A DNA stretch of 64,000 nt, taken from IMG/VR virus record IMGVR_UViG_3300037502_003770, positions 186,001 to 250,000 of that record; one strand, given 5' to 3'. The translations under genes and the position numbers were made by a program. This document shows, in pieces, positions 3,416-33,221 of the stretch (its first letter is position 1; every line of letters begins with the position of its first letter). The notes under the pieces were generated by a model. That model was not told where the DNA came from, did not search any database, and worked only from the letters and a program-made list of their open reading frames with translations.

Positions 3416-3610
3416 TTACATCCATAAAGATTTACGATTCCAAAGATTTTTAAATAATCGAACCAAAGATGAGTTGACAATATTTTCAAACTCATCTTTG
3501 GTTTTTTTAGTCCCTATTTGTTTAGAAACTTCATCTTCAATCATTTTTTTATATGTATCTTTTATTTCAGATTTAATTTTATCTAACTCTTTTTTTGATA
3601 ATTCTGCCAT
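3416..3610 (-). CDS. Hypothetical protein downstream of portal
   Basis: Start overlaps the portal stop (TAATG at 3608-3612); charged helical 64-aa product. Confidence 0.65.
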   Translation of the reverse strand: MAELSKKELDKIKSEIKDTYKKMIEDEVSKQIGTKKTKDEFENIVNSSLVRLFKNLWNRKSLWM

Positions 3611-6015
3611 TATGTTATTCTTTTATTTAAAGTTTCATTTATTTTAAGTTTATTTAATTCTCTGAAAAAGATTTCATTCAAATTTTGGTTTTTATCTTCA
3701 GGTTCATTTTCTTGATTAGGAAGATTGTTTTGGTCAGGACCACCTAAACCTAAATCACCACCTCCGCCAGCAGGATTATTTAAATCAGGTGTACCACCTA
3801 AACCTAAATCACCGCCTCCAGTATCACCAAAACCTCCTGCACCACCGAAATCACCTCCAAGAGAAGCGCCTCCACCGAAGCCACCACCTCCACCAAAATC
3901 ACCCATACCCATATCACCGCCTTGTGGTTGTTGACCTTGAGTTTGGGTACTTGGTTTAATATCAAAACCAGCATTTTGGTATTTAATATATTTATCCATT
4001 AATTTAGATGATTTAATTAACATTGGTGCAGACTTTACTTCTTCACCTATTTTAGATTCAATAAATTGGTCCAAAATATCATCTAAAATATCTTCTTCCG
4101 ACATACCAAGTATTTCTTTTTTAGCTTTTGTTGTTGACATTGGCGCTAAACCATTAGCCCCTTGTTGTGTTGCTGAATTATATGCTGTTAATTTTTCATT
4201 CATATTAGCAATTTTCAACATTTCAGCTTGAGATGATGGGTTTTGCATTGTAATTGTAAAATTATCAATATTTTCTAAGAAATCCCCTCCCTTCAAAAAA
4301 AGATGTATAATTGCAATTTTATTTAATTCTGAAATTAAAGATTGTTGTATTCTATTAATTTTTCTTGCAAACCTTATGTCTAATATAGAAAGGTTTGTTC
4401 CACCCTTTTCCATAGAACCATCCGATGAAAACGCAAGAAATATTTTAGGAATACCTAAACCTGTAAATAATAAATCCCTGAAGTAAGAAACATCCATGAT
4501 TGCATCAAGATTTGAGTTTTGTGTAAATATTCCACAAGATAGTAAAAAGTTATGATAATCATGTTCTTCTTCATTACCATCGATTGTAAGTGTACCAGTA
4601 TCAATTTTATAATCTAAATCCTCAACTGAAATAACAGAAATATTTATTTCTTTATTAAAACTCCATAATGATTCATTAACTTCTAAATCTTTAGCTTCTT
4701 TAATACCATTAAATTTAGTTGGGAATTTATGGTCAGGTGTAGTAATAATTGTTTCACTATTATCTAAAGTAATTTTTACTACATCAGTATTTTTTCTTGT
4801 TACAGCAGCATTAGTAATTTTACCTGGTACTATTTCACCAGTTTCAGGATTAATACTATAAGTCCATAATTGTTTAGTTTTATCAGAATTAAATTCATCT
4901 ATAATTTCAGATAACATTAAACTTCTACCATCTAATAAATCTATTTTAGTATCTAAAGCTAGACAAGCACCAGGAAGAGTTTCTATTGGAGATGAAGCGT
5001 TATCACTTCTTGTTGGAATAAAAATATCTTCATCATTTGTTGCAACGTGATACTTCCAGTTATAATCACCAGTTTTAGGGTCAATTAATGGTTTTTTCTT
5101 TACTTTATTTGCAACCATTTGAACATAAGAACCTATATCTTCTGTAGGAATATTTCCAACATTTACTTTATAAATCCTTCTTTCAGCGGCTCTAGTAATT
5201 CTATATACTAACATAGAATCTTCCATCATACTAAGTATTCTCCAAATTCTTCTTACTTTATCTAAAACAGACATACCATAAGGCATCCTTCTATCATCAC
5301 CAAGTAATCTAAAGTGTGCTATTTGCCAGTGAGTAAATTGACTACTATCAATACCACCTTCAGTCATTTTATTTCTAAAATAAATATTAATATCTTCATT
5401 ACCATTACTATCTCTTTTAGTTTCTTCAACTCTTTCAATATTAATATTTGGTAATTGTTTTGCACCTGTTACACCTTCTTTATCATTTAAATTTAAATAA
5501 ACAAAATTATCGCCATATTTACACATGTTTCTTGCCCAGAATTGCAATGTAGTATTAACATCCAATACTTTATAAAAAAGATATTCTAATTCTTGTTTAA
5601 CTCTTTTATTATCAGAATAAATATTAATTACTTTACCATTATCGCCAATAGTTGTAGCTTCTTCTGATAATAAATCTAATGCAGAACCAATTATAGGATA
5701 TGATTCCATTAATTCAAAATCATAATATTGCATAATTCTATTAGATTCATAAGCTAATGAATTATTTCTATCTACTTTAATTAAGCTTTTATATTGATTA
5801 TCAAAAAATACACTTTGTTGATATGTTTTAACTTTTAATTCTAATTCTTCTTTTGTTTTAGCAATTATTTTATCTTTATCAACATCTACTTCATTTTGGT
5901 TTATTTTATTACCATTAATATCTTCTATATTTTTATTAACATATGAGGTACTACTAATGTTAGTAGGAAAAAGTAAATCACCTAATCTGTTAAATATCGT
6001 CTTGTTATTAGCCAT
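3610..6015 (-). CDS. Portal protein (T4 gp20-like), intein-containing, Gly-rich C-terminal tail
   Basis: gp20-like motifs QIAHFRLLGD, PYGMSVL, EDSMLVYRITRAAERRIYKVNVGN, EDIFIP, IETLPGA, GIPKIFL, DIRFARKINRIQ. Confidence 0.93.
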   Translation of the reverse strand: MANNKTIFNRLGDLLFPTNISSTSYVNKNIEDINGNKINQNEVDVDKDKIIAKTKEELELKVKTYQQSVFFDNQYKSLIKVDRNNSLAYESNRIMQYYDFELMESYPIIGSALDLLSEEATTIGDNGKVINIYSDNKRVKQELEYLFYKVLDVNTTLQFWARNMCKYGDNFVYLNLNDKEGVTGAKQLPNINIERVEETKRDSNGNEDINIYFRNKMTEGGIDSSQFTHWQIAHFRLLGDDRRMPYGMSVLDKVRRIWRILSMMEDSMLVYRITRAAERRIYKVNVGNIPTEDIGSYVQMVANKVKKKPLIDPKTGDYNWKYHVATNDEDIFIPTRSDNASSPIETLPGACLALDTKIDLLDGRSLMLSEIIDEFNSDKTKQLWTYSINPETGEIVPGKITNAAVTRKNTDVVKITLDNSETIITTPDHKFPTKFNGIKEAKDLEVNESLWSFNKEINISVISVEDLDYKIDTGTLTIDGNEEEHDYHNFLLSCGIFTQNSNLDAIMDVSYFRDLLFTGLGIPKIFLAFSSDGSMEKGGTNLSILDIRFARKINRIQQSLISELNKIAIIHLFLKGGDFLENIDNFTITMQNPSSQAEMLKIANMNEKLTAYNSATQQGANGLAPMSTTKAKKEILGMSEEDILDDILDQFIESKIGEEVKSAPMLIKSSKLMDKYIKYQNAGFDIKPSTQTQGQQPQGGDMGMGDFGGGGGFGGGASLGGDFGGAGGFGDTGGGDLGLGGTPDLNNPAGGGGDLGLGGPDQNNLPNQENEPEDKNQNLNEIFFRELNKLKINETLNKRIT
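4516..4965 (-). mobile_element. Mini-intein (150 aa, no homing endonuclease) in portal
   Basis: Begins CLALDTKI (Cys1, aa 351), block B TTPDHKF, block F/G HNFLLSCGIFTQN followed by Ser+1; inserted at LPGA|SNL. Confidence 0.92.
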
Positions 6016-19078: not shown

Positions 19079-19104
19079 AAAGGGTACTTTTTTAAGTACC
19101 CTTT
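19079..19104. terminator. Bidirectional terminator between convergent capsid and nuclease genes
   Basis: AAAGGGTACTT-TTTT-AAGTACCCTTT stem-loop. Confidence 0.75.
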
Positions 19105-20615
19105 GTTCTTTTATAGATAAGTGTTTCAAATTTTTCTTTATTTTTTTCAAAATCGTTTTTAAAAGTAAAAATTTGTTTACTATAAGTTTTATTTAAAAAT
19201 TTACATTGATTATTTACTTTACTATATGTAAATTTTGTTAATTTAGAAGCTTCAGTCATAGACCTATATTCTGCAATAATTTCTTTTGTCTCTAAATCAT
19301 ATAAATAAACAGGCATACTTTCACCGCTTAATAATTTACTTTCTTTTATTTTATTAATAGTTTCTTCATCTCTTTTTTTACCTTCCCAAAATTTAGGTGA
19401 ATTTTCTGATAACCATTTCTTTTGTTCTTCTGTTTTTGGTCTACCTAAAACTTTAGCTGCTTCACCACGTTTTACTCTTTTATCAACATGTTCTTTAGTT
19501 TGTTTTCTACCTAAACCAGCTTTAGACATCTTTTGTCTTGTTTCTTCTGAAATAATTTTATTTCTACCACCTAAATCAATATTATAACCTATGTTTCTAT
19601 CAGTAGAATTATATTCTTTTATATAAAAGATTTCTTTTTCATTTAGTTCATTAATATCATGAGTTTCGTAAATAACGTCAAATTTAAAGTTATCAAATCC
19701 ATATTTAATAATTGCATTTTTTAAATGCTCATTACATTTTAATCTTTTATAACATGTTATTCTATGTCTTAATAAACGATAAGTTTGTCCAATATAAATT
19801 TTACCATTAATTAAATTTGTTATTTTATAAATAAGACCAGGATTTCTTAAATTAAACCTTTCTATAATATCTTCTTTTTTAGGATAAGGTTTAATCATAT
19901 GTTTAATTTTCTCATAAAAATTTTTATTTTCATATTTATTACCTATAAAATAAAAATATCTACTTTTACGAAGTTGTGTATTAAATTTAGCGTTAGGGTA
20001 AACTTTCAATACATTTTCAACTGAACTAGAACCAATCTTTTTTCTTATAGTTTTTTCTGAATAAGCTTTCCCATCTATTATAATTTTCATTCTTTTTTTC
20101 TCATTACCATACTTGTCATAATTCCCTTCCATAAGACCTACATAATACCAATTGCATGATTGATAGATTATACCTATTTCACCAGCAAGAGCGTCTGTTG
20201 TGGCTGTAATGACCTTATAATCGGTGTTTTTCTTTAACAATTTACAAACTTTTGAAATAAAGAAAGATGCTGTATTAATAGGTGTCCAATGAAGACAAAC
20301 TCCTCTTGAAAGGAGGATTATTTTTTCAAAGAAATCATATTTTTTCCAATGGTCTTTATTTGCGGAATACTCATGAGAAAAAACAAGCACACCTCCAAGG
20401 TATTCAATATTATCAATATTAAAAAATATACCAAAATAGTATATATTATAAGGTGCTAAAGCTTTAAGGTATTCATATTCTTTAACAATATTTTCAGCTT
20501 CTAAACGAGTTATTTCTTTAATAACCGTATTTTTCAAAGAAGCTTTATTTTTATCAAAAGGAAGTATTTCTTCTAATTCTTTTTCTTTTCTAATTAGATA
20601 CTGATGGCAATCCAT
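19092..20615 (-). CDS. Fusion: Mom-like (GNAT-fold) DNA modification domain + GIY-YIG endonuclease with NUMOD3/IENR1-like DNA-binding tail
   Basis: aa 1-245: LSRGVCLHWTPINTASFFIS, TDALAGEIGIIYQSCNWYYVG, KSRYFYFIG...KPYPK (Mom-like); from aa 260: LIYKITNLINGKIYIGQT, LNEKEIFYI, GYN; ISEETRQKMSKA; PVYLYDL...YRSMTEAS. Confidence 0.85.
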   Translation of the reverse strand: MDCHQYLIRKEKELEEILPFDKNKASLKNTVIKEITRLEAENIVKEYEYLKALAPYNIYYFGIFFNIDNIEYLGGVLVFSHEYSANKDHWKKYDFFEKIILLSRGVCLHWTPINTASFFISKVCKLLKKNTDYKVITATTDALAGEIGIIYQSCNWYYVGLMEGNYDKYGNEKKRMKIIIDGKAYSEKTIRKKIGSSSVENVLKVYPNAKFNTQLRKSRYFYFIGNKYENKNFYEKIKHMIKPYPKKEDIIERFNLRNPGLIYKITNLINGKIYIGQTYRLLRHRITCYKRLKCNEHLKNAIIKYGFDNFKFDVIYETHDINELNEKEIFYIKEYNSTDRNIGYNIDLGGRNKIISEETRQKMSKAGLGRKQTKEHVDKRVKRGEAAKVLGRPKTEEQKKWLSENSPKFWEGKKRDEETINKIKESKLLSGESMPVYLYDLETKEIIAEYRSMTEASKLTKFTYSKVNNQCKFLNKTYSKQIFTFKNDFEKNKEKFETLIYKRTKGT

Positions 20616-21489: not shown

Positions 21490-22038
21490 TTAAAGTTTAA
21501 CATAAGTTGTACCAGAGATAAATTCTCTTTTATTTCTTTTTTCATTTAATTGAGATACTGTATGACCAAATGTTTTTTCAAAGTGTGGCGCATCTTTAAA
21601 TGATTTCCAATCTCCGCCCCATATCCAGTTATATTTTTTAAATACTTCAACAACTTCCATCCAATCAGGTTTTTTATCATTATCAAAATCTTTTCTCATA
21701 TCCCAAGATACTTCTTTATTATCAATTAATAAACAGAAATCTAAAGCAAGACCAAAGTTATGAATTGATTGCCATTCTCTAGCTCTTGTAACAACTTTAT
21801 TTTGAGCTGCGGTAATTGGTCCCATATTAGCAGCTTTTCTTAAAGAATTAACAGTTGTTAAATTTTGTCTTCCTTGAGCAAATAAGGCTCTTTGCTCAGC
21901 TTCGGTTCTTAGAGTATAAGTAAATCTTACTTCAGCTCTACCTGTTAATTTAGTACATATTTCTTTATATATTGTTTCAACTTCTTGTCTAACAGAAGGG
22001 TGAAGGGTTTGTATTCTTTGTAGAGTTATACTGTCCAT
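21490..22038 (-). CDS. Endolysin, M15 family L-Ala-D-Glu peptidase
   Basis: RTEAEQRALFAQGR, SIHNFGLALDF, WGGDW, DAPHFE; CTATTTA at 22057-22063 (minus). Confidence 0.92.
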   Translation of the reverse strand: MDSITLQRIQTLHPSVRQEVETIYKEICTKLTGRAEVRFTYTLRTEAEQRALFAQGRQNLTTVNSLRKAANMGPITAAQNKVVTRAREWQSIHNFGLALDFCLLIDNKEVSWDMRKDFDNDKKPDWMEVVEVFKKYNWIWGGDWKSFKDAPHFEKTFGHTVSQLNEKRNKREFISGTTYVKL

Positions 22039-22343
22039 AATAAAAATCTTTTATTATAAATAGTATTTATTACTAATTCAATTAATAATCTTATTTTAAA
22101 TTTAGATGTTTTTGGTATATCTCTGTAAGATACAGGTATTTTCTTATTTTTTATGATATAAAGTGTTAAATAATAATAAAACTTATAATTATAATATTTT
22201 TTATTTTGTATAAAGAAATAATATTCTGATGGTAGTAGACATTTTTTATTAGTATAAATATCTTTTAATTTTATATTAAAATATAAATAACATCTTTTAT
22301 TCTCAAGATAAATAAAGTTATCATTAAATAGAATTATATACAT
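22026..22343 (-). CDS. Small paralog-array protein
   Basis: N-terminus MYIILFNDNFIYLE shared with four neighbours. Confidence 0.65.
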   Translation of the reverse strand: MYIILFNDNFIYLENKRCYLYFNIKLKDIYTNKKCLLPSEYYFFIQNKKYYNYKFYYYLTLYIIKNKKIPVSYRDIPKTSKFKIRLLIELVINTIYNKRFLLWTV

Positions 22344-26172: not shown

Positions 26173-28893
26173 TTATAATCTTGGGTCAATTTGTGATTCT
26201 TCTTTTAATTTTAAATGTAACTTACACATAAGGTTAAAATAATCTTTATTATCTATGTTTAAATCAGAGTATTTAATATCTAATAAACTTTTACTTAAAG
26301 AAAATTCTTCTATTGAAGTTCTAAGTTTTTTATTTATTGATTTTTTATTAAGTAATTTATTGTATTTAAATTCACTTAAATAATCATGACCATAAACAAT
26401 AGTTAGATAATTTTTATTTCTACATTTTAGATATGGAGCTATATTGTTATTATAGACATATTCAGGTTTAATTACAACACCTTCCATATTCTGATTTTGT
26501 GTAAGTATATTATAGAAGTTATTAATATTTGTTAATAAATCATTTTCATTATTAGTAATATTTTCTCCTTCAATAAACGCTTCACAAGTATTAGTATTTA
26601 AATCTGCAATAAGATATGTTTTTTGTTTTAAAACATTTGTAAAAATATCTATATTACTTTCAGAACTACTAATCATATTTTTTTCTTCTCCATTATTATA
26701 AACTATTTTTAAAATAGAGAATGGTTCAATAGTAGTTTCAACTTCTTTAGAATAAATATCTAATTGATTTTTATAATTTTGAAGTAAAGATTTATTTTCA
26801 TCAAGAGATAAATGTTGTTTATAATAATTTCTATAATTAGAATAAGTGTTGTTTATGTTATTACCTAATAAATCAGATAATTCTTTTTTATTACGGTCTT
26901 TACTGATAGTATTATAATCTACTGAATTAAAACTATCTTTTATTGAAGAGAATATTTTTTCAAATCCTGTTTTTTCTAAGAAAGTATTTTCTTCTTTAAT
27001 AACATTATAGTACTTATCAAAATTATTATCAATTAAACCATCACTTAATAAAGACCAAGGCAATAATTCACCATCTCCAATTATTAAGTTAATATTATTT
27101 TGTTTAAAATAATCTTCAGTAAAAATAGTATATAATTTAGAATAAACATTACTTAAATCTTTATTTTTAATAATAAAACCATTTCTACTAGTACAATAGT
27201 TTTTATCAGAGTTTTCAGGATTAAATAAATAGAAATTACATCTTGAACCCATATATTTAGGTTGTAGAATTAATTTATTAATATTTTTATTTCTAAAATA
27301 TTCAATACCTTCTTGTAATGATTCTATATCATTATCTAATTTATTAGTAGGAGACATTGTTCCACTAATAAAGTTTACTTTATTTAGATTAATAAGTCTT
27401 TTAATCTTATTTAAATCTTTAGAATCGATATATTCTGTATTAACATAATTACCTACTTCTTTAATTAAACTAAATAAAATTTCATTTTTATTTTCGTAAT
27501 TAGAATCTACCCAATTTATTAAAGGTTTAAAGCTTTTAAAAAGACTTATTGAAGATAATCTTTTACCATAAACAGAGCCAGTATCAATAAAAATTCTATT
27601 TTTATTAAGAGAAACCTCATAAAAATTAATATGTCCATTAATTACTTTAATAAACGAGTGTTCAGACGTTTTAAAGATAGGTGATAGTAATTCATTAATT
27701 AAATTATTAGTCGCCTCATAATCGATTTCTGTATCGTTTACGTAGATTTTCTTAGGATATCTGAAACCACCTTTAACTTGATTACTTATTGAAGTATTAT
27801 CTACCTTTAAAAGATACTTATTTTCACAAGGAGCGTGATTTAAAATAAAATAATCATTATATAAGAAAGGATAACAAATAGTATCAATAATTTCAAAGAA
27901 TTTATTTCTACATTCCTCATCAGATTGTAAATAAGGAATAGAACTAAATTTTTCTAAAACATCTTTTTCAGTATTATTAATTTCACCTTTTAAATATTTA
28001 TATACAAAATTTTCATGATTACCTAAAGTAATTTTAATATTATCTTTGTTTAAATATATAAAGTCAACTATTTCTTTAGTATTAAAACCTTTATCTACAA
28101 AATCACCTATTAAAACAATATTAGATTTTATTTCTTTACTAAAAGCTTCTTTAATTAAAGGTTGAATGATATTATTTTCATCTATTATAAACCCATTTTT
28201 TAGAATAAGTCTTTTTAATGAATCCACATCCTCATGCACATCACCAATAACAACATATTCTTCATCATTACTTAATTTATAAGTTTGATATTTATCATAA
28301 TCATCTATTACTATTTCAATATTTTGAAAACTTTCTAATGATTTTACTTTAAAAATAGAACCATATTTAGATTTACTTATATTTGTAGAAAGTTCTTTCT
28401 TTAATTTAAGAACATGGTCTGAAGTAGTTCTATTAGCTCTTTTTCTATGTTCTTCTGGATAATTACTTATATTAGAAAAATAATCATTTCTATTATTGTA
28501 ATCAAAAACAACTAATTTAAGATTATAATTATATTCTTTACAATAAGAAACAATACTTTCTCTAAAACGAGGGTCAATTGCGGTAGAATTAATAATTACT
28601 AAATCAGCATTATTTGGAAAAGAAAGAGTATTTTTTAATTTATCAAATAATAAATTAAATGGTTTACTTCCCATAGTAAGATATGTTTCATTAAATTTAT
28701 CATATTCATGTAAACTACCTAAAATTTCATTTCTAATATTATCAGTAGATAATACGTGTACATTTTTAAATTCTGGGTATTTTTCTTTTATTTGAGGAAG
28801 TAATACATTATTAGTAAAATAATCTTTTCCACAAGAAGAAGGTCCAACATACATTAATACTGTATGATATTTAAGATTAAGAATATTTTTCAT
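26173..28893 (-). CDS. pnkp: Polynucleotide kinase-phosphatase-ligase (bacterial Pnkp type)
   Basis: N-terminal P-loop GPSSCGK; metallophosphoesterase GDVHE, GDFVDKG, GNHE, GH, DTG; ligase motifs QPKYMGSR, DGELLPW, EGVVIKP, KCR; ends IDPRL. Confidence 0.9.
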   Translation of the reverse strand: MKNILNLKYHTVLMYVGPSSCGKDYFTNNVLLPQIKEKYPEFKNVHVLSTDNIRNEILGSLHEYDKFNETYLTMGSKPFNLLFDKLKNTLSFPNNADLVIINSTAIDPRFRESIVSYCKEYNYNLKLVVFDYNNRNDYFSNISNYPEEHRKRANRTTSDHVLKLKKELSTNISKSKYGSIFKVKSLESFQNIEIVIDDYDKYQTYKLSNDEEYVVIGDVHEDVDSLKRLILKNGFIIDENNIIQPLIKEAFSKEIKSNIVLIGDFVDKGFNTKEIVDFIYLNKDNIKITLGNHENFVYKYLKGEINNTEKDVLEKFSSIPYLQSDEECRNKFFEIIDTICYPFLYNDYFILNHAPCENKYLLKVDNTSISNQVKGGFRYPKKIYVNDTEIDYEATNNLINELLSPIFKTSEHSFIKVINGHINFYEVSLNKNRIFIDTGSVYGKRLSSISLFKSFKPLINWVDSNYENKNEILFSLIKEVGNYVNTEYIDSKDLNKIKRLINLNKVNFISGTMSPTNKLDNDIESLQEGIEYFRNKNINKLILQPKYMGSRCNFYLFNPENSDKNYCTSRNGFIIKNKDLSNVYSKLYTIFTEDYFKQNNINLIIGDGELLPWSLLSDGLIDNNFDKYYNVIKEENTFLEKTGFEKIFSSIKDSFNSVDYNTISKDRNKKELSDLLGNNINNTYSNYRNYYKQHLSLDENKSLLQNYKNQLDIYSKEVETTIEPFSILKIVYNNGEEKNMISSSESNIDIFTNVLKQKTYLIADLNTNTCEAFIEGENITNNENDLLTNINNFYNILTQNQNMEGVVIKPEYVYNNNIAPYLKCRNKNYLTIVYGHDYLSEFKYNKLLNKKSINKKLRTSIEEFSLSKSLLDIKYSDLNIDNKDYFNLMCKLHLKLKEESQIDPRL

Positions 28894-30206
28894 TATTTTT
28901 TTGTAATTAAAGCTACTTGCGTTGGTTGAATATTGTTTACTGTATCACCACAATAAGATATTTCTATATTGTATAAATTATTATCTATAATGTTAGATAA
29001 AAATGATTGAAATTCGATTTCATTAAATTCAAATTTATGGTCATGATGTCTACTATCAACATTATCATCAAATATATAAAATTGATTAAATGATTGATTA
29101 GGTGTTGTAATAACAAATTTATCAAAATTAATATTATCTACAACTTGTTTAATTAAATATTTAGCATCATCTATTTCTAAATGTTCTATAACTTCTGTTA
29201 AAAGAACATCCATTTTATTATTAGAAAATTCATTTTCTGTATAAATTTCAAGAAATTCTGAAATATCATTAAATAAGTAAACATAATCTTCTAGTTCTTT
29301 TTTTCTAATAGTATGTTTTAAATCTTCTATTATTTCAGAATCTTTATCAATAGAATAAATAACAAATTCTTTATTATCATTCTTTAATTGTTTACCATAT
29401 CTTGTTGAATAAAAGCCTTCACCACAACCTAAATCAATAAGTGATTTATCTAAAGTAATTATTTTACTAATATGGTTATATCTTTGAATATGTGTATCTC
29501 CTATTGAAAAATCATATTTATTAGTAGAAGATTCATCTAATATCTTTTTAAAATTAACGAATTTATTACTTGAACTAGATAAGAAATTCTTTTTATAAAG
29601 GTATCTTATAAAATAAGGAGAATCAATACTTACAATAAGTTTAAGATATTTTTCAACTAACTTATCATCAAAATAAATATCTTCTTTATTAATTAAAGTA
29701 GAAAAGATTGTAAATACTGTAGTAACAGATAATAAATATGTTAATGATTTATTTGTTGTAATAGTTACATTATAAATATCTTTACCTATTAAAGTAAAGT
29801 CAATTTTACTATTAGAAAAATACTTATTAAAAATAAGAAAATAGTCTTGGTAATCTAATTCATAACAGCTAAAAGTTATTGAATGTTGATAAATATCATC
29901 AATATCTTTTACGTTTTGTTTTCTTAAACTATCAGAAAGATATTCATTAATTAATGAATTATAACAAAAAGATGAACAATATTTATTAACAGATAAATAT
30001 TCAAAATCGGGATTACTTTTATCTTTAAAAGATATAGTATCAGGACTATCGGTAAAAAATATATTATACTGTGTATTTAAACCTTCAGTATAATATGCAA
30101 AAGAAAAACCTTCTCTAATAGATTTAATTAACGGTAAAGAAGAAGGGTTTTTATTTATTAAAAAAGATAACTCAGGGTTTGTTGAGTTTAATTGAAGAAA
30201 AGCCAT
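28893..30206 (-). CDS. hen1: 3'-terminal RNA ribose 2'-O-methyltransferase Hen1
   Basis: N-terminal LSFLINKNP (Hen1 ligase-activating domain), DLGCGEG, TEVIEHL, TTPN..FN, RHHDHKFEF; stop overlaps pnkp start (TAATG). Confidence 0.9.
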   Translation of the reverse strand: MAFLQLNSTNPELSFLINKNPSSLPLIKSIREGFSFAYYTEGLNTQYNIFFTDSPDTISFKDKSNPDFEYLSVNKYCSSFCYNSLINEYLSDSLRKQNVKDIDDIYQHSITFSCYELDYQDYFLIFNKYFSNSKIDFTLIGKDIYNVTITTNKSLTYLLSVTTVFTIFSTLINKEDIYFDDKLVEKYLKLIVSIDSPYFIRYLYKKNFLSSSSNKFVNFKKILDESSTNKYDFSIGDTHIQRYNHISKIITLDKSLIDLGCGEGFYSTRYGKQLKNDNKEFVIYSIDKDSEIIEDLKHTIRKKELEDYVYLFNDISEFLEIYTENEFSNNKMDVLLTEVIEHLEIDDAKYLIKQVVDNINFDKFVITTPNQSFNQFYIFDDNVDSRHHDHKFEFNEIEFQSFLSNIIDNNLYNIEISYCGDTVNNIQPTQVALITKK

Positions 30207-30260
30207 ATTTATATGTTTAATTTTAAACGATATAAATATTACTTTTAAACTTCATATATG

Positions 30261-30387
30261 TTAAATATTTAATGAATTAATTCTTTCATTTGAAAAATCA
30301 AAATAAGATTTAACTATTTCTGTACCTAAAAAATTTCTATTTAGTTTTTTTGATACATAACAAGTAGTACCTGTACCTGAAAATGGG
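30261..30387 (-). pseudogene. 3' fragment of DNA methyltransferase split by tnpB element
   Basis: Minus-strand translation PFSGTGTTCYVSKKLNRNFLGTEIVKSYFDFSNERINSLNI* (motif I FxGxG); rejoins in frame with 31849-32456. Confidence 0.9.
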
Positions 30388-31848
30388 TTAGAAACTGTTA
30401 ATTATTTTATATTCTTCTATTATACTTTATATCACTTTATCTTAATAAAAATAATTTTATTTTACTATTTATATTAAAATACTACCACTCTTTAAAATAT
30501 ATGTATTCTATTAAAGTAAGACTTTATTTAAATAAACAACAACAAGAAAAATTAGAAACAATTTTTGATGCTTGCCGTTTTACTTATAATAAAGCCCTTT
30601 CTCATAAAATAAATACTTATACTAATAGTAAAAAATCTTTATCAAAAAATGATATTTCTAAATATTATCATGGTTTTTTAAGAAAAGAATTTTCTTTTTT
30701 AAAAGATGTTAATACTAAAGTGGTTAAACAAAGTTTAAGAGATTTAGATAAAGCTTTTAAAAACTTTTTTAAAAATAATAAAGGATTTCCTAAATTTAAA
30801 AGTAAGAGAGAAAAAGAAAAGAAATGTAGATTTCCTAATGATGCTATTTCTAAGGAATTTTTATCAGAAGGGAAGTATTTAAATTTTATAAAAGGTTTAT
30901 ATAAAGTAAGGTTTAGATGTTCTAAAGAGTATTTAGAAATATTACAATCTATTAAAAGAGATGATGATATAGAAAATATAACTGTTACTAAGAAAAGAAG
31001 TGGTATTTATGAAGCTTCTATTTGTTTAAATAAATCTAAACCAAAAGGAAAGAAGTTAAAAGAGACTGATTCTATTATAGGAATAGATTTAGGTATTAAA
31101 GAATTATTAGTCCTTTCTGATGGAACTGTACATAAAAATAATAAATATTATTTAAAATCAGAAAAGAAATTAAAGAAATTACAAAGGAAGCTTTCTAAAA
31201 GTATAGAATGTTTTAAAGAGAGTAAGAACCCTAAGAGTAAATATTTTACTAAGAATAAAGGTAAAAATTTAGAAAAGAACAGATTAAAAGTAGCAAGACT
31301 TAATGAAAAGATAACAAACCAAAAAGATACTTATATTCATGAAATAACTTCTAAAATTATAAACGAAAACCAAGTTATAGTAATGGAAGATTTGAATGTA
31401 AGCGGTATGTTAAAAAATCATAAGTTAGCAAGGTCAATTCAAAATGTTTCTTTTTCTGAAATAAAGAGACAATTACAATATAAATCGTCTTTTTATGGAA
31501 GAGAATTTATTTTAATAGATAGGTTCTTTCCTTCAAGTAAGACTTGTTCTTGCTGTGGAAATAAGAAGAAAGATTTAAAATTAAGTGACCGAGTATATAA
31601 ATGTAATAATCCTTCATGCGGAATAGAAATCGATAGAGATTTAAATGCAGCGATAAACATTCGCAACGAAGGTATAAGAATAATGAATAACAGAAATGTT
31701 ATTTCAAAAAGTAGGGGTCCGTTGCTCCGAACATAACGCTTGTGGACTATCCTCTATCGGGGTTATAATTGCAATATATTATAATTAGATATGATAGGTT
31801 GAAACAAGAAAACGGTATTATATGAAAGTATAATATTTATTATAACGG
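30388..31848 (+). mobile_element. Non-autonomous IS607-like tnpB element (1461 bp)
   Basis: Left flank ends TGGG, right end ends GG; removal restores TTTGACCCATTT (F-D-P-F) on minus; 11-bp subterminal inverted match tattatacttt (30418-30428) / aaagtataata (31825-31835); no tnpA. Confidence 0.85.
30501..31736 (+). CDS. tnpB: TnpB RNA-guided nuclease, canonical RuvC
   Basis: N-terminal HTH (KVRLYLNKQQ...CRFTYN), GIDLG, VMEDL, CSCCG...CNNPSCG zinc finger, DRDLNAAINI; CTATTTA at 30465-30471. Confidence 0.95.
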   Translation: MYSIKVRLYLNKQQQEKLETIFDACRFTYNKALSHKINTYTNSKKSLSKNDISKYYHGFLRKEFSFLKDVNTKVVKQSLRDLDKAFKNFFKNNKGFPKFKSKREKEKKCRFPNDAISKEFLSEGKYLNFIKGLYKVRFRCSKEYLEILQSIKRDDDIENITVTKKRSGIYEASICLNKSKPKGKKLKETDSIIGIDLGIKELLVLSDGTVHKNNKYYLKSEKKLKKLQRKLSKSIECFKESKNPKSKYFTKNKGKNLEKNRLKVARLNEKITNQKDTYIHEITSKIINENQVIVMEDLNVSGMLKNHKLARSIQNVSFSEIKRQLQYKSSFYGREFILIDRFFPSSKTCSCCGNKKKDLKLSDRVYKCNNPSCGIEIDRDLNAAINIRNEGIRIMNNRNVISKSRGPLLRT

Positions 31849-31868
31849 TCAAAAATTAAATCACCTTC
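31711..31868 (+). ncRNA. Putative omegaRNA (scaffold to 31848 plus flank-derived guide)
   Basis: GC-richer structured stretch overlapping the tnpB 3' end (gtaggggtccgttgctccgaacataacgcttgtggac...gaaacaagaa) up to the element's right end; boundaries inferred. Confidence 0.5.
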
Positions 31869-32456
31869 ATTAGAAAAATTTGTTATAATCTTTTCAACTA
31901 ATTCTTCTGGAAAAACGGCTGAATGTTCTTTAAGAACTTTTTTTCCTCTATTAATTTTCCAAGTATCTGATAATTCACCTCTTTTAAAATTAACTTTATC
32001 AAATTGTCTACTTATTGAATTACTAGAATCAAATATTAAAATTAACTCGCTTTGTCTATTTAAAACACCTGGTAACATAGATGGTTGACCATGCCCTTTA
32101 TCCCAAACAATAATATCTTTTAATTGTTCAGCAAATTCACCTATAAGTTTAAAAAATGCTCTTTTAGAACCTGTAACTATTTGAATATTATAAAATATAA
32201 TTTTACTAGTTCTTAATAATTCAGTTAAAATTGATTTATGTAATTCATAAAAATCATCTATAGGTAAATCATCATTAAAACCAACATATTTTGTAGAAAA
32301 ACCCTTTTCTTTATAACTTCTTTTAACATATTTATCACCTCTAATACGAAGATTCATATTATAAGGTGGGGATGTTATAACTACATCAATTTCTTTGTCT
32401 TGTATTTCTTTTAATATATCTAAACAATTTTGATTATATATTTTATTAATTTCCAT
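31849..32456 (-). pseudogene. 5' fragment of beta-class N4C/N6A DNA methyltransferase (ORF track 31818-32456)
   Basis: Motif IV VITSPPYN near the N-terminus, HSAVFPEELV, then GDLIFD| truncated just before motif I by the insertion. Confidence 0.9.
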
Positions 32457-32482
32457 AAGAATAATATTTTATATTCTTACTT

Positions 32483-32893
32483 TTAAATTTCATATATGTT
32501 AATATCAGGTTTTGTTCTTGTAAACATTTTTCTTAATCTACCAGCCATCGCATTTGCCTCATCTTCTATTGGTCCACCAATATCAGGTATTTCATTATAT
32601 TTATCTAATTCACCTGTTTCATCTTGCATTTGATGAGTTAATTCATGTGCAATAGTTGTTAAAATATCACTAAAACCTCTACCTTCATATCTAACATATG
32701 TTTTATATTGTGAAGGTGTATAACCTCCAGTAGACATCTGTTTTACGTAATCTTGTTTCTTAGGTAAAAATGTTATTTCACTATCTTTTTTTAAAGAAAG
32801 TTCTTCAAAACAAAATTTAATAAATTCTTCAAATAACTCTTTTTTAAATGAATCAACTTCTAAAGACTTGTGATATTTTATTGTAATTTTCAT
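32483..32893 (-). CDS. Putative zincin-like metallopeptidase
   Basis: TIAHELTHQMQ (HExxH) and downstream EDEAN. Confidence 0.65.
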   Translation of the reverse strand: MKITIKYHKSLEVDSFKKELFEEFIKFCFEELSLKKDSEITFLPKKQDYVKQMSTGGYTPSQYKTYVRYEGRGFSDILTTIAHELTHQMQDETGELDKYNEIPDIGGPIEDEANAMAGRLRKMFTRTKPDINIYEI

Positions 32894-32906
32894 ATTAATA
32901 AATAGT

Positions 32907-33221
32907 TTATATTTTAAAAATCTTCATATTAATAAATGAGTTTATTCCAATAGAAAAAATAATATAAAAGAAACTTATTTTAAAGAATAATAAATTTACT
33001 AAAGTAAAGAATATTAGATTAAACCAAAAACCAAAACAAATAGGACATAAACCTAAAGGTTTAACTAATTTAGGATATTTAGTTTCTAATTGTAATAAAA
33101 TTTTATAATACCAATCAAATATATTTCCATCATTAAAACAAAAATCAATGAAGTAAATATAACAACTAGATATAAAACTAATAAAAATAACTATAAAAAT
33201 ATTAAATAATATTATTTCCAT
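32907..33221 (-). CDS. Membrane protein with CxxC
   Basis: Hydrophobic segments flanking LGLCPICFGFW. Confidence 0.6.
   Translation of the reverse strand: MEIILFNIFIVIFISFISSCYIYFIDFCFNDGNIFDWYYKILLQLETKYPKLVKPLGLCPICFGFWFNLIFFTLVNLLFFKISFFYIIFSIGINSFINMKIFKI

What the first reader, a model, noticed from the sequence alone, without database searches (positions are those of the whole stretch)
30261..32456. IS607-like tnpB element splits a DNA methyltransferase at its SAM-binding motif; ends, TAM and guide are readable
Seen: deleting 30388-31848 yields ...GDLIFD-PFSGTGTT...SLNI*, a 244-aa beta-class methyltransferase. Junctions on +: aaaaTGGG|ttagaaac...tataacGG|tcaaaaattaaatcacc. Both halves are free of stops, suggesting a recent event. 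Known: IS607 serine transposases recombine at a GG core, and a TGGG TAM was reported (from memory) for a Clostridium botulinum IS607 TnpB. Inference: the omegaRNA guide is TCAAAAATTAAATCACC..., which with TGGG targets exactly the intact methyltransferase allele, so the element can cut empty-site relatives and drive loss of methylation through the population.
Basis: partly seen in the sequence, partly recalled or inferred. Interest (0 to 1): 0.72.

Follow-up and report, generated by a model that had tools for sequence, protein, structure and literature searches.

The report
Guide-RNA transposon splitting a phage methylase
A 1,461-base transposon remnant carrying an RNA-guided nuclease gene (tnpB) sits inside a DNA methylase gene of a 313-kb T4-like phage, and near-identical wild phages keep the uninterrupted gene, so this is a well-documented natural example of a known kind of selfish element.

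Summary
Window 30388-31848 is a 1,461-bp insert in a minus-strand PF01555 DNA methyltransferase gene. Removing it restores a 244-aa frame.

A syntenic relative (L087, 97% identical) carries exactly that intact gene, with the site ...AAAATGGG|TCAAAAATTAAATCACCTTC. Contigs from three public metagenomes show the same 1,461-bp skip. One sample holds both the filled and the empty form.

The insert is a tnpA-less IS607-type element:
- It lies between GG dinucleotides and follows a TGGG.
- Its left end resembles the left ends of relatives.
- Its tnpB is intact, with the D-E-D residues and zinc finger.
- Its guide-RNA scaffold is RAGATH-18-like and ends in ...AACGG at 31848, as in relatives that sit beside an IS607 transposase.

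Cutting of empty sites and homing remain inference.

Three corrections:
- The genome has no serine recombinase.
- It keeps an intact 87%-identical methylase paralog. That copy carries TGGG but has four guide mismatches, so loss of methylation is doubtful.
- Two further tnpB copies (one in this genome, one in a relative) lack canonical ends.

This is a new member of a known kind.

The parts
30261..30387 (-). C-terminal fragment of the split DNA methyltransferase (PFSGTGTT...SLNI*, motif I / SAM-binding). It has no start codon of its own: an in-frame stop lies 5 codons upstream, inside the insert.
   Evidence: It is identical to the ortholog L087 over this whole stretch.
30384..30387 (+). TGGG next to the left end: the predicted TAM and IS607 target motif. 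Its last GG is the recombination core dinucleotide.
   Evidence: It is preserved in the empty alleles.
30388..31848 (+). Non-autonomous (tnpA-less) IS607-type element, 1,461 bp. The boundary is ambiguous by 3 nt (GGT).
   Evidence: The joint skipping 1,461 nt appears in three metagenomes. The window minus this stretch aligns colinearly with L087.
30388..30500 (+). Left end (113 bp). Its terminal motif TTAGAAACTGTTAAT resembles the left ends of related tnpB elements that follow ..GG.
   Evidence: L010 AGGG|TTATGAACTGTTATC, L014 GGGGG|TGCTAAACAGTTAAC, L016 TTGG|TAGTTCATTTAATTATTAT.
30463..30473 (+). TACTATTTATA, a phage promoter-like motif 27 nt upstream of the tnpB ATG. It is the first conserved block shared by tnpB copies A, B and C.
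   Evidence: The genome has 20 copies against 4.6 expected, and 19 lie 12-32 nt before an ATG, including the tail sheath gene.
30501..31736 (+). tnpB, 411 aa, intact. It has the HTH, the RuvC residues D196, E296 and D380, and the zinc finger C349/C352/C368/C373.
   Evidence: Pfam PF12323, PF01385 and PF07282. NCBIfam guided_TnpB scores 297.9 bits against a cut-off of 100. PDB matches are 8iaz and ISDra2 TnpB. dN/dS against copies B and C is 0.45-0.46.
31714..31810 (+). Guide-RNA (omegaRNA/reRNA) scaffold core: a 5' hairpin at 31714-31728 and a RAGATH-18-like motif at 31739-31810.
   Evidence: The Rfam RAGATH-18 match is 28.8 bits, below the gathering score of 44.9, E 0.015. Of the 19 consensus pairs, 12 show compensatory changes across 7 homologs.
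31811..31848 (+). Scaffold 3' tail and right end: a 10-bp hairpin with a GAAA loop (31814-31837), then ...TTATTATAACGG.
   Evidence: The hairpin is. Homologous tails ending ...GAACGG at 41-47 nt occur in L003, L005, L010, L014, L016 and L042. The published scaffold end ...UCGG is.
31849..31868 (+). Predicted 20-nt guide, and the target in empty alleles: TCAAAAATTAAATCACCTTC.
   Evidence: It follows the ...ACGG end directly. It matches perfectly after TGGG in L087 and in the X4 contig, which has 0 differences over 31847-31972. The only exact match in the own genome is preceded by AACGG.
31849..32456 (-). N-terminal fragment of the methyltransferase (motif IV TSPPY and the target-recognition part). 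As it stands it encodes a 212-aa truncated product with 9 residues read from the insert.

Best explanation
Window 30388-31848 is a non-autonomous IS607-family insertion sequence. It has a left end, a phage-type promoter motif, an intact tnpB and a guide-RNA scaffold, but no tnpA.

Shown: it was inserted at a TGGG site, by GG-core recombination without target duplication, into one of two paralogous beta-class DNA methyltransferase genes of a 313-kb T4-like jumbo phage. The insertion is young and polymorphic, because filled and empty alleles coexist in nature.

Inferred mechanism: tnpB and the downstream RNA are transcribed from the internal promoter-like motif. The RNA is processed into a scaffold that ends ...AACGG at 31848, followed by a roughly 20-nt guide copied from the flanking methylase sequence (31849 onward). 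The TnpB-RNA complex would cut any co-infecting genome that carries TGGG followed by that sequence, which is the uninterrupted allele. The filled allele is spared because the same target is preceded there by ACGG. In a recombination-proficient T4-like phage the break would be repaired from the filled genome, copying the element in (non-restorative homing), or the competitor genome would simply be damaged.

The original insertion needed a serine recombinase supplied in trans. The cost to the phage is probably buffered by the intact paralog.
For: - Exact empty sites: L087 and joints in runs X1, X2 and X4, with filled and empty forms both present in X1.
- GG at both junctions and TGGG on the left, matching the published specificity of CboTnpA_S and CboTnpB.
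- The scaffold tail ending ...ACGG is homologous to the tails of relatives.
- Relatives with 48% identical TnpB lie directly downstream of an IS607 transposase: L003, NF033518 at 187 bits against a cut-off of 110. L042 is similar.
- tnpB is intact, with catalytic and zinc residues invariant across 20 homologs, and is under purifying selection.
- The RNA stems covary.
- The self target is preceded by AACGG. The only other GGG-flanked near-match is the paralog, with 4 mismatches. ISFba1 IS607 TnpB is reported to be sensitive to single mismatches (abstract).
- A 262-nt difference-free tract surrounds the junction, against a 2.9% background.
- The phage promoter-like motif lies inside the element.
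Against: - There are no RNA or cleavage data. No run identified as RNA was listed, though RNA runs were not specifically searched for.
- The Rfam RAGATH-18 match is below the curated threshold, and the relatives gave no match at E <= 0.01.
- The 3' tail is 38 nt, against about 64 nt in the structurally characterised ISFba1 RNA, so the architecture is not identical.
- No tnpA is present in the genome.
- The empty allele in X1 carries a linked SNP (30344 G>A) that X4 also has. It is therefore a separate lineage, not evidence of ongoing excision.
- Sister copies B and C keep intact tnpB genes without canonical ends. TnpB may therefore be kept for something other than homing at this site.
Confidence: 0.72

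Rival explanations
1. Dead insertion. The element is a stranded relic that got into the methylase gene once, through a trans-acting recombinase. It no longer makes a working nuclease-RNA complex. The filled/empty polymorphism is neutral or mildly deleterious drift with no drive.
For: No tnpA is present in the genome. The RAGATH-18 match is sub-threshold. The 3' tail is shorter than in the characterised ISFba1 RNA. Filled and empty alleles have similar depth in X1, and only empty alleles appear in X2 and X4.
Against: The 411-aa ORF is intact in a 23% GC genome. Catalytic and zinc residues are conserved. dN/dS is 0.28-0.46 among the three copies. The RNA stems covary and the tail and ...ACGG end are conserved.
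Confidence: 0.2
2. The guide starts at 31813, not 31849. The scaffold would end where copies A, B and C stop being alike (...GAAACAAGAAAA). The 36 nt up to 31848 would be an old guide and flank carried along from an earlier site.
For: A, B and C are alignable only over 30463-31812. The insert junction lies 36 nt beyond the shared core in A, at most 35 nt beyond it in B, and 8-13 nt in C.
Against: Six more distant relatives, including true IS607 elements with TnpA, share a homologous 41-47-nt tail after the same motif. It consists of a hairpin and TAAGTTTTnTTGAACGG. Copy A's tail (...TAATATTTATTATAACGG) fits it and ends exactly at the methylase junction. The published IS607 scaffold ends ...UCGG. 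In ISFba1 a 3' flank separates RAGATH-18 from the guide. B and C are better read as copies with damaged or missing ends.
Confidence: 0.05
3. The insert is an IStron or intron-like element that is spliced out of the methylase transcript, so the methylase stays functional.
For: IS607-type tnpB elements fused to group I introns exist in Clostridia, and their splice sites coincide with the transposon ends. Both halves of the gene are still open.
Against: tnpB and its RNA lie on the strand opposite to the methylase. Rfam finds no intron in 29500-33000 at E <= 1. The left end is only 113 bp. The open halves are explained by the youth of the insertion, given 98.1% identity to the intact ortholog.
Confidence: 0.02

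Closest known systems
IS607-family TnpB elements of Clostridium botulinum (CboIStron; Zedaveinyte et al., bioRxiv 10.1101/2023.11.20.567912)
   Same: Insertion follows 5'-TGGG-3' with a GG core at both junctions. The scaffold ends ...CGG directly before the guide. Self is told from non-self at TAM position -3 (here ACGG against TGGG). TnpB is proposed to cut the empty site and so keep or spread the element.
   Different: There is no group I intron and no tnpA_S in the element or the genome. The host is a lytic-type T4-like jumbo phage, not a bacterial chromosome. The element is antisense to the gene it interrupts, so it cannot be removed at the RNA level. An internal phage promoter-like motif is present.
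RAGATH-18 reRNA-guided IS607 TnpBs (ISFba1; Ren et al., Cell Res 2024, PMC11061315; the closest natural solved chain here, 8iaz, E 3e-49, is deposited as 'Transposase' and may be this protein, which I did not check)
   Same: It is a compact TnpB of about 400 aa with RuvC D-E-D residues. Its RNA has a 5' hairpin, a RAGATH-18-type motif, a 3' flank and a guide. Its TAM is G-rich and contains GG.
   Different: The RAGATH-18 match is below Rfam's threshold. The 3' flank is 38 nt rather than about 64 nt. The inferred TAM is TGGG rather than AGGAG or GAGGG.
Free-standing and intron-borne homing endonucleases of T4-like phages (Seg, Mob, I-TevI), and 'transposon non-restorative homing' as framed in the OMEGA review (PMC13565253)
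   Same: The predicted behaviour matches: cut the allele that lacks the element in a co-infecting phage, then let recombinational repair copy the element in along with its flanks.
   Different: Recognition would be by guide RNA plus TAM, not by protein. The element interrupts a coding sequence without any splicing rescue.

Membership tests
IS607 family insertion sequence | Encodes a serine-recombinase TnpA (MerR-type HTH plus resolvase domain) | tested here: not met
   No ORF lies between the left end and tnpB. PF00239 finds nothing in the whole 312,694-bp genome at E <= 1, while the control genomes do match. Relatives do have it: L003 matches NF033518 at 187 bits, and L042 has it too. The element is therefore a non-autonomous derivative, not a complete IS607.
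IS607 family insertion sequence | Integration at a GG core dinucleotide, GG at both junctions, no target-site duplication | tested here: met
   The junctions read ..TGGG|TTAG.. and ..AACGG|TCAA... The empty site is TGGG|TCAA in L087 and in three metagenomes, with a 3-nt ambiguity.
IS607 family insertion sequence | Target and TAM motif 5'-TGGG-3' next to the left end | tested here: met
   The motif is present at 30384-30387 and is retained in the empty alleles. Whether this TnpB actually uses it as a TAM cannot be tested with these tools.
TnpB RNA-guided endonuclease (OMEGA) | HTH, OrfB_IS605 (RuvC) and zinc-ribbon TNB domains with the D-E-D catalytic triad | tested here: met
   Pfam E-values are 4.7e-13, 1.2e-16 and 1e-21. 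NCBIfam guided_TnpB scores 297.9 bits against a cut-off of 100. The IS607_TnpB model scores 179.8 bits and the IS200_TnpB model 318.6 bits, both below their cut-offs. D196, E296, D380 and the four cysteines are invariant in 20 homologs.
RAGATH-18 RNA (Rfam RF03064) | Scores at or above the gathering threshold of the covariance model | tested here: not met
   The score is 28.8 bits against a gathering score of 44.9 (E 0.015), over the full model 1-71. Ten related loci gave no match at E <= 0.01. The outer stem and the GGA...GAUGAAaCAAGAA ends are shared and the stems covary. It works like RAGATH-18 but is not a certified member.
IStron (IS plus group I intron) | A group I intron in the element, on the same strand as the interrupted gene | tested here: not met
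   No intron match was found. The element is antisense to the methylase.
Beta-class N6/N4 DNA methyltransferase (PF01555) | Motif IV (S/D)PPY upstream of motif I FxGxG, and a match to the family model | tested here: met
   PF01555 scores 63.9 bits against a cut-off of 26.7. TSPPY lies in the N part and PFSGTGTT in the C part. Base specificity was not determined. The only full-length solved matches are cytosine-N4 enzymes at E 1.5e-6, whereas source annotations of homologs say adenine-specific.

The most novel reading that the evidence does not exclude
A transposon-derived tnpB cassette has become wired to a phage promoter in a jumbo T4-like phage lineage. It now behaves as an RNA-guided homing endonuclease that spreads between co-infecting phages. 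Copy A is caught in the act, with filled and empty alleles in the same sample. The end-less copies B and C would be the next stage: free-standing cassettes bounded by promoter motifs, moved by phage recombination rather than by transposition, and perhaps kept for competition between phages.
Probability: 0.3. Interest if true: 0.65.

Novelty: new member of a known kind. Interest (0 to 1): 0.45.

Why it matters
RNA-guided homing by TnpB has been shown in bacteria with engineered assays. Its spread between co-infecting phages has so far been only a proposed category. This locus offers a natural test case in which everything can be read from sequence: the ends, the TAM, the guide, a perfectly matching empty allele in a 97%-identical relative, and both alleles in one sample. 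Allele frequencies and flanking co-conversion tracts could therefore be followed in existing metagenomes. It also shows how, in a very AT-rich genome, a G-rich target motif pushes insertions into conserved Pro/Gly codons of enzymes. Finally, it shows how a paralog that differs at four guide positions can coexist with the element.

Tried and rejected
- Close DNA relatives: none in the phage record collection (megablast), and no exact matches in IMG/VR or in JGI metagenome contigs for the empty-site pattern. The relatives were reached instead through protein clusters and Logan contigs.
- Guide at 31813: I first suspected that the guide starts at 31813, because copies A, B and C align only up to 31812. 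I rejected this after more distant IS607 relatives showed a conserved tail ending ...ACGG.
- Copy B: its tail may end in GCTCGG. Those six bases are also the first six of an intact tRNA-Glu gene, so this stays unresolved. No relative of that tRNA region was found.
- Left-end similarity by blastn-short was uninformative in this AT-rich DNA. The short shared terminal motif was seen by eye.
- The IStron/intron reading was rejected on strand and on the Rfam result.
- Assembly chimera was rejected, because independent contigs cross both junctions.
- The 'moraphage' paper could not be tied to this genome.
- No structure or complex prediction was run. They would not change the verdict.
Full report
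**Context.** The window is bases 186001-250000 of a single 312,694-bp viral contig that is 96% complete by CheckV. GC is about 17-29%. The window encodes a T4-type portal protein, a Gp23-type major capsid protein and a tail sheath. This is a T4-like jumbo phage. The closest cellular homologs of its methylase carry Bacteroidetes and Flavobacterium names, which hints at the host phylum.

On the minus strand a PF01555 DNA methyltransferase (63.9 bits) begins at 32456 and runs to ...NFSNEGDLIFD at 31849, then continues for 9 junk codons. The rest of the protein (PFSGTGTT...SLNI*) lies at 30387-30261. It is preceded by an in-frame stop and has no start codon. Between the two parts, on the plus strand, lies a 411-aa tnpB (30501-31736) with HTH_OrfB_IS605, OrfB_IS605 and Cas12f1-like TNB domains. 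Removing 30388-31848 restores a 244-aa frame.

**Natural empty sites exist and match exactly.**
- The 90%-identity protein cluster of the truncated N fragment holds a 244-aa member, P0241.
- P0241 is encoded on L087, a 20.7-kb contig with the same gene order: sheath ... 136-aa gene, methylase, Hen1, Pnkp.
- The L087 gene differs from the rejoined window gene at 14 of 735 nt and 3 aa. Its site reads ...CCTGAAAATGGG|TCAAAAATTAAATCACCTTCATTAGAAAAA, identical to the window with the insert removed.
- With the insert deleted, 6,040 nt of the window align to L087 in one ungapped-at-the-junction match at 97.1% identity.
- Logan contigs of three public runs show a joint 30385->31847 that skips 1,461 nt. 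X2 gives an 848-nt contig. X4 gives a contig at depth 217 with no depth over tnpB. X1 gives a contig at depth 15.6.
- X1 also holds the filled form at depth 17, so the two alleles coexist in one sample.
- The X1 empty allele carries a linked SNP (30344 G>A) that is shared with X4. It is therefore a separate lineage, not a fresh excision product.
- Contigs of X1 and X3 cross the left junction (X3 by only 6 nt), and an X3 contig crosses the right junction, all without differences. The insertion is not an assembly artefact.

**The insertion is young.** The nearest differences to L087 lie at 30250 and 31974. That leaves a 262-nt identical tract around the junction against a 2.9% background. Only 3 of the 14 differences in the gene change the protein.

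**What the insert is.**
- Both junctions carry GG, the left flank reads TGGG, and nothing is duplicated.
C. botulinum IS607-type TnpA_S integrates at 5'-TGGG-3' with a strict GG. CboTnpB needs a TGGG TAM. The guide-RNA scaffold ends ...UCGG, and position -3 separates TAM from self.
- Homologs of this TnpB at 48% identity sit directly behind an IS607 transposase: L003, NF033518 at 187 bits. L042 is similar.
- The element's first bases (TTAGAAACTGTTAAT) resemble the starts of related tnpB-only elements that follow ..GG.
- The element itself has no tnpA, and neither does the genome. It is a non-autonomous IS607 derivative.

**Where the guide starts.**
- Rfam gives a full-length but sub-threshold RAGATH-18 match at 31739-31810 (28.8 against 44.9 bits). 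That motif is reported to accompany only IS607 TnpBs.
Copy B lies at genome 299.2-300.6 kb, between tRNA-Met and tRNA-Glu, and its TnpB is 77% identical. Copy C lies on the related contig L001 and its TnpB is 76% identical. Both align with copy A only over 30463-31812.
- Six more distant relatives settle the question. After the same ...GAUGAAaCAAGAA they carry a 41-47-nt tail, made of a hairpin and TAAGTTTTnTTGAACGG. Copy A's 38-nt tail (hairpin 31814-31837, then TAATATTTATTATAACGG) is homologous and ends exactly at the methylase junction.
- In the characterised ISFba1 RNA a 3' flank likewise separates RAGATH-18 from the guide.
- The scaffold stems covary: 12 of 19 pairs show compensatory changes.

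**Is the nuclease likely to work?**
- The ORF is intact. D196, E296, D380 and the four zinc cysteines are invariant among 20 homologs.
- The best natural solved matches are 8iaz ('Transposase', 384 aa) and ISDra2 TnpB.
- dN/dS among copies A, B and C is 0.28-0.46.
- In the phage's own genome the only perfect target is the self site, which is preceded by AACGG.

**Corrections to the interpretation.**
1. The genome keeps an intact 246-aa paralog at 92743-93483. Its protein is 87% identical, and dN/dS against the split copy is 0.19. Near-identical phages carry it too.
2. The paralog's site is ATGGG|TCATATATTAAATCATTTTC, with four mismatches to the guide at positions 4, 6, 16 and 17. It probably escapes cutting and probably still methylates, so 'loss of methylation' is doubtful.
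3. The split copy lies in a Pnkp-Hen1-methylase island that the relative L001 lacks altogether.
4. The hit on the SAM motif is most simply explained by the scarcity of G-rich sites. There are 428 TGGG sites in 313 kb, and this one is created by the Asp-Pro codons.

**A phage-specific feature.** The block shared by A, B and C begins with TACTATTTATA. That motif occurs 20 times in the genome against 4.6 expected. In 19 cases it lies 12-32 nt before an ATG, including the sheath gene and other structural genes. tnpB thus seems to be driven by a phage promoter.

**Copies B and C.**
- Copy C's empty site lies in this window at about 22066-22070.
- Copy C lacks the canonical ends and the scaffold tail, and it carries an extra 86-aa ORF with no family match.
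- Both copies look like cassettes moved by recombination rather than by transposition.

**Mechanism (inferred).** The complex of TnpB and guide RNA would cut uninterrupted alleles (TGGG plus guide match) in co-infecting phages. Recombinational repair from the filled genome would then copy the element in. This is the 'transposon non-restorative homing' already framed in a 2026 review. No RNA or cleavage data were available. No run identified as RNA was listed, though RNA runs were not specifically searched for.

**Verdict.** It is a new, unusually well-documented member of a known kind.

Noticed in passing
own genome 299204-300602 (outside the window): A second tnpB copy (B; 417 aa, 77% identical) lies between tRNA-Met (299118-299192) and tRNA-Glu (300597-300669) in a small tRNA cluster. 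It has no canonical left end. Its possible right end, ...ATGCTCGG, coincides with the first six bases of the intact tRNA-Glu.
   Followed up: partly
window 22066-22070, compared with L001:4887-6513: This intergenic spot lies between the M15-peptidase-like gene (21490-22038, minus strand) and a 138-aa gene. It is the empty site of a third tnpB copy (C, 76% identical) in a related phage. That insert has no GG junctions, lacks the scaffold tail, and brings an extra 86-aa ORF with no family match.
   Followed up: partly
own genome 142252-143319 (outside the window): A third, distant tnpB-like reading frame (37% identical over 397 aa by tblastn).
   Followed up: no
window 26173-30206 (minus strand): A bacterial-type RNA repair pair. 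Pnkp (906 aa) has kinase, phosphatase and ligase domains. Hen1 (437 aa) has Hen1_N and a methyltransferase domain. They sit directly beside the split methylase. The island is present in relative L087 but absent from relative L001.
   Followed up: partly
window 3610-6015 (minus strand): The T4-type portal gene (801 aa) contains an intein splicing domain (PF14890, residues about 367-596). This is another selfish element in the same window.
   Followed up: no
20 sites in the genome, e.g. window 15737, 22065, 30463, 33818, 36179, 39703, 48306: The motif TACTATTTATA is about four times over-represented. It almost always lies 12-32 nt upstream of a start codon, including those of structural genes, so it is probably a phage promoter element.
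   Followed up: partly
own genome 92743-93483; L084-L086: An intact paralog of the split methylase is conserved at 98% nucleotide identity in contigs from several other samples. Its TGGG site differs from the element's guide at four positions.
   Followed up: yes
window 19092-20615 (minus strand); ortholog L001:7953-9479: The 507-aa gene next to the major capsid gene has an ortholog with precomputed Mom and weak GIY-YIG Pfam hits. It may be a DNA-modification or endonuclease fusion. I did not check this in the window itself.
   Followed up: no
run X2, a 3,248-nt contig laid on window 30460-31854: Another tnpB copy, about 91% identical and apparently keeping the canonical right end, sits at a different site in a 2025 aquatic metagenome whose phage has the empty methylase allele.
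   Followed up: no
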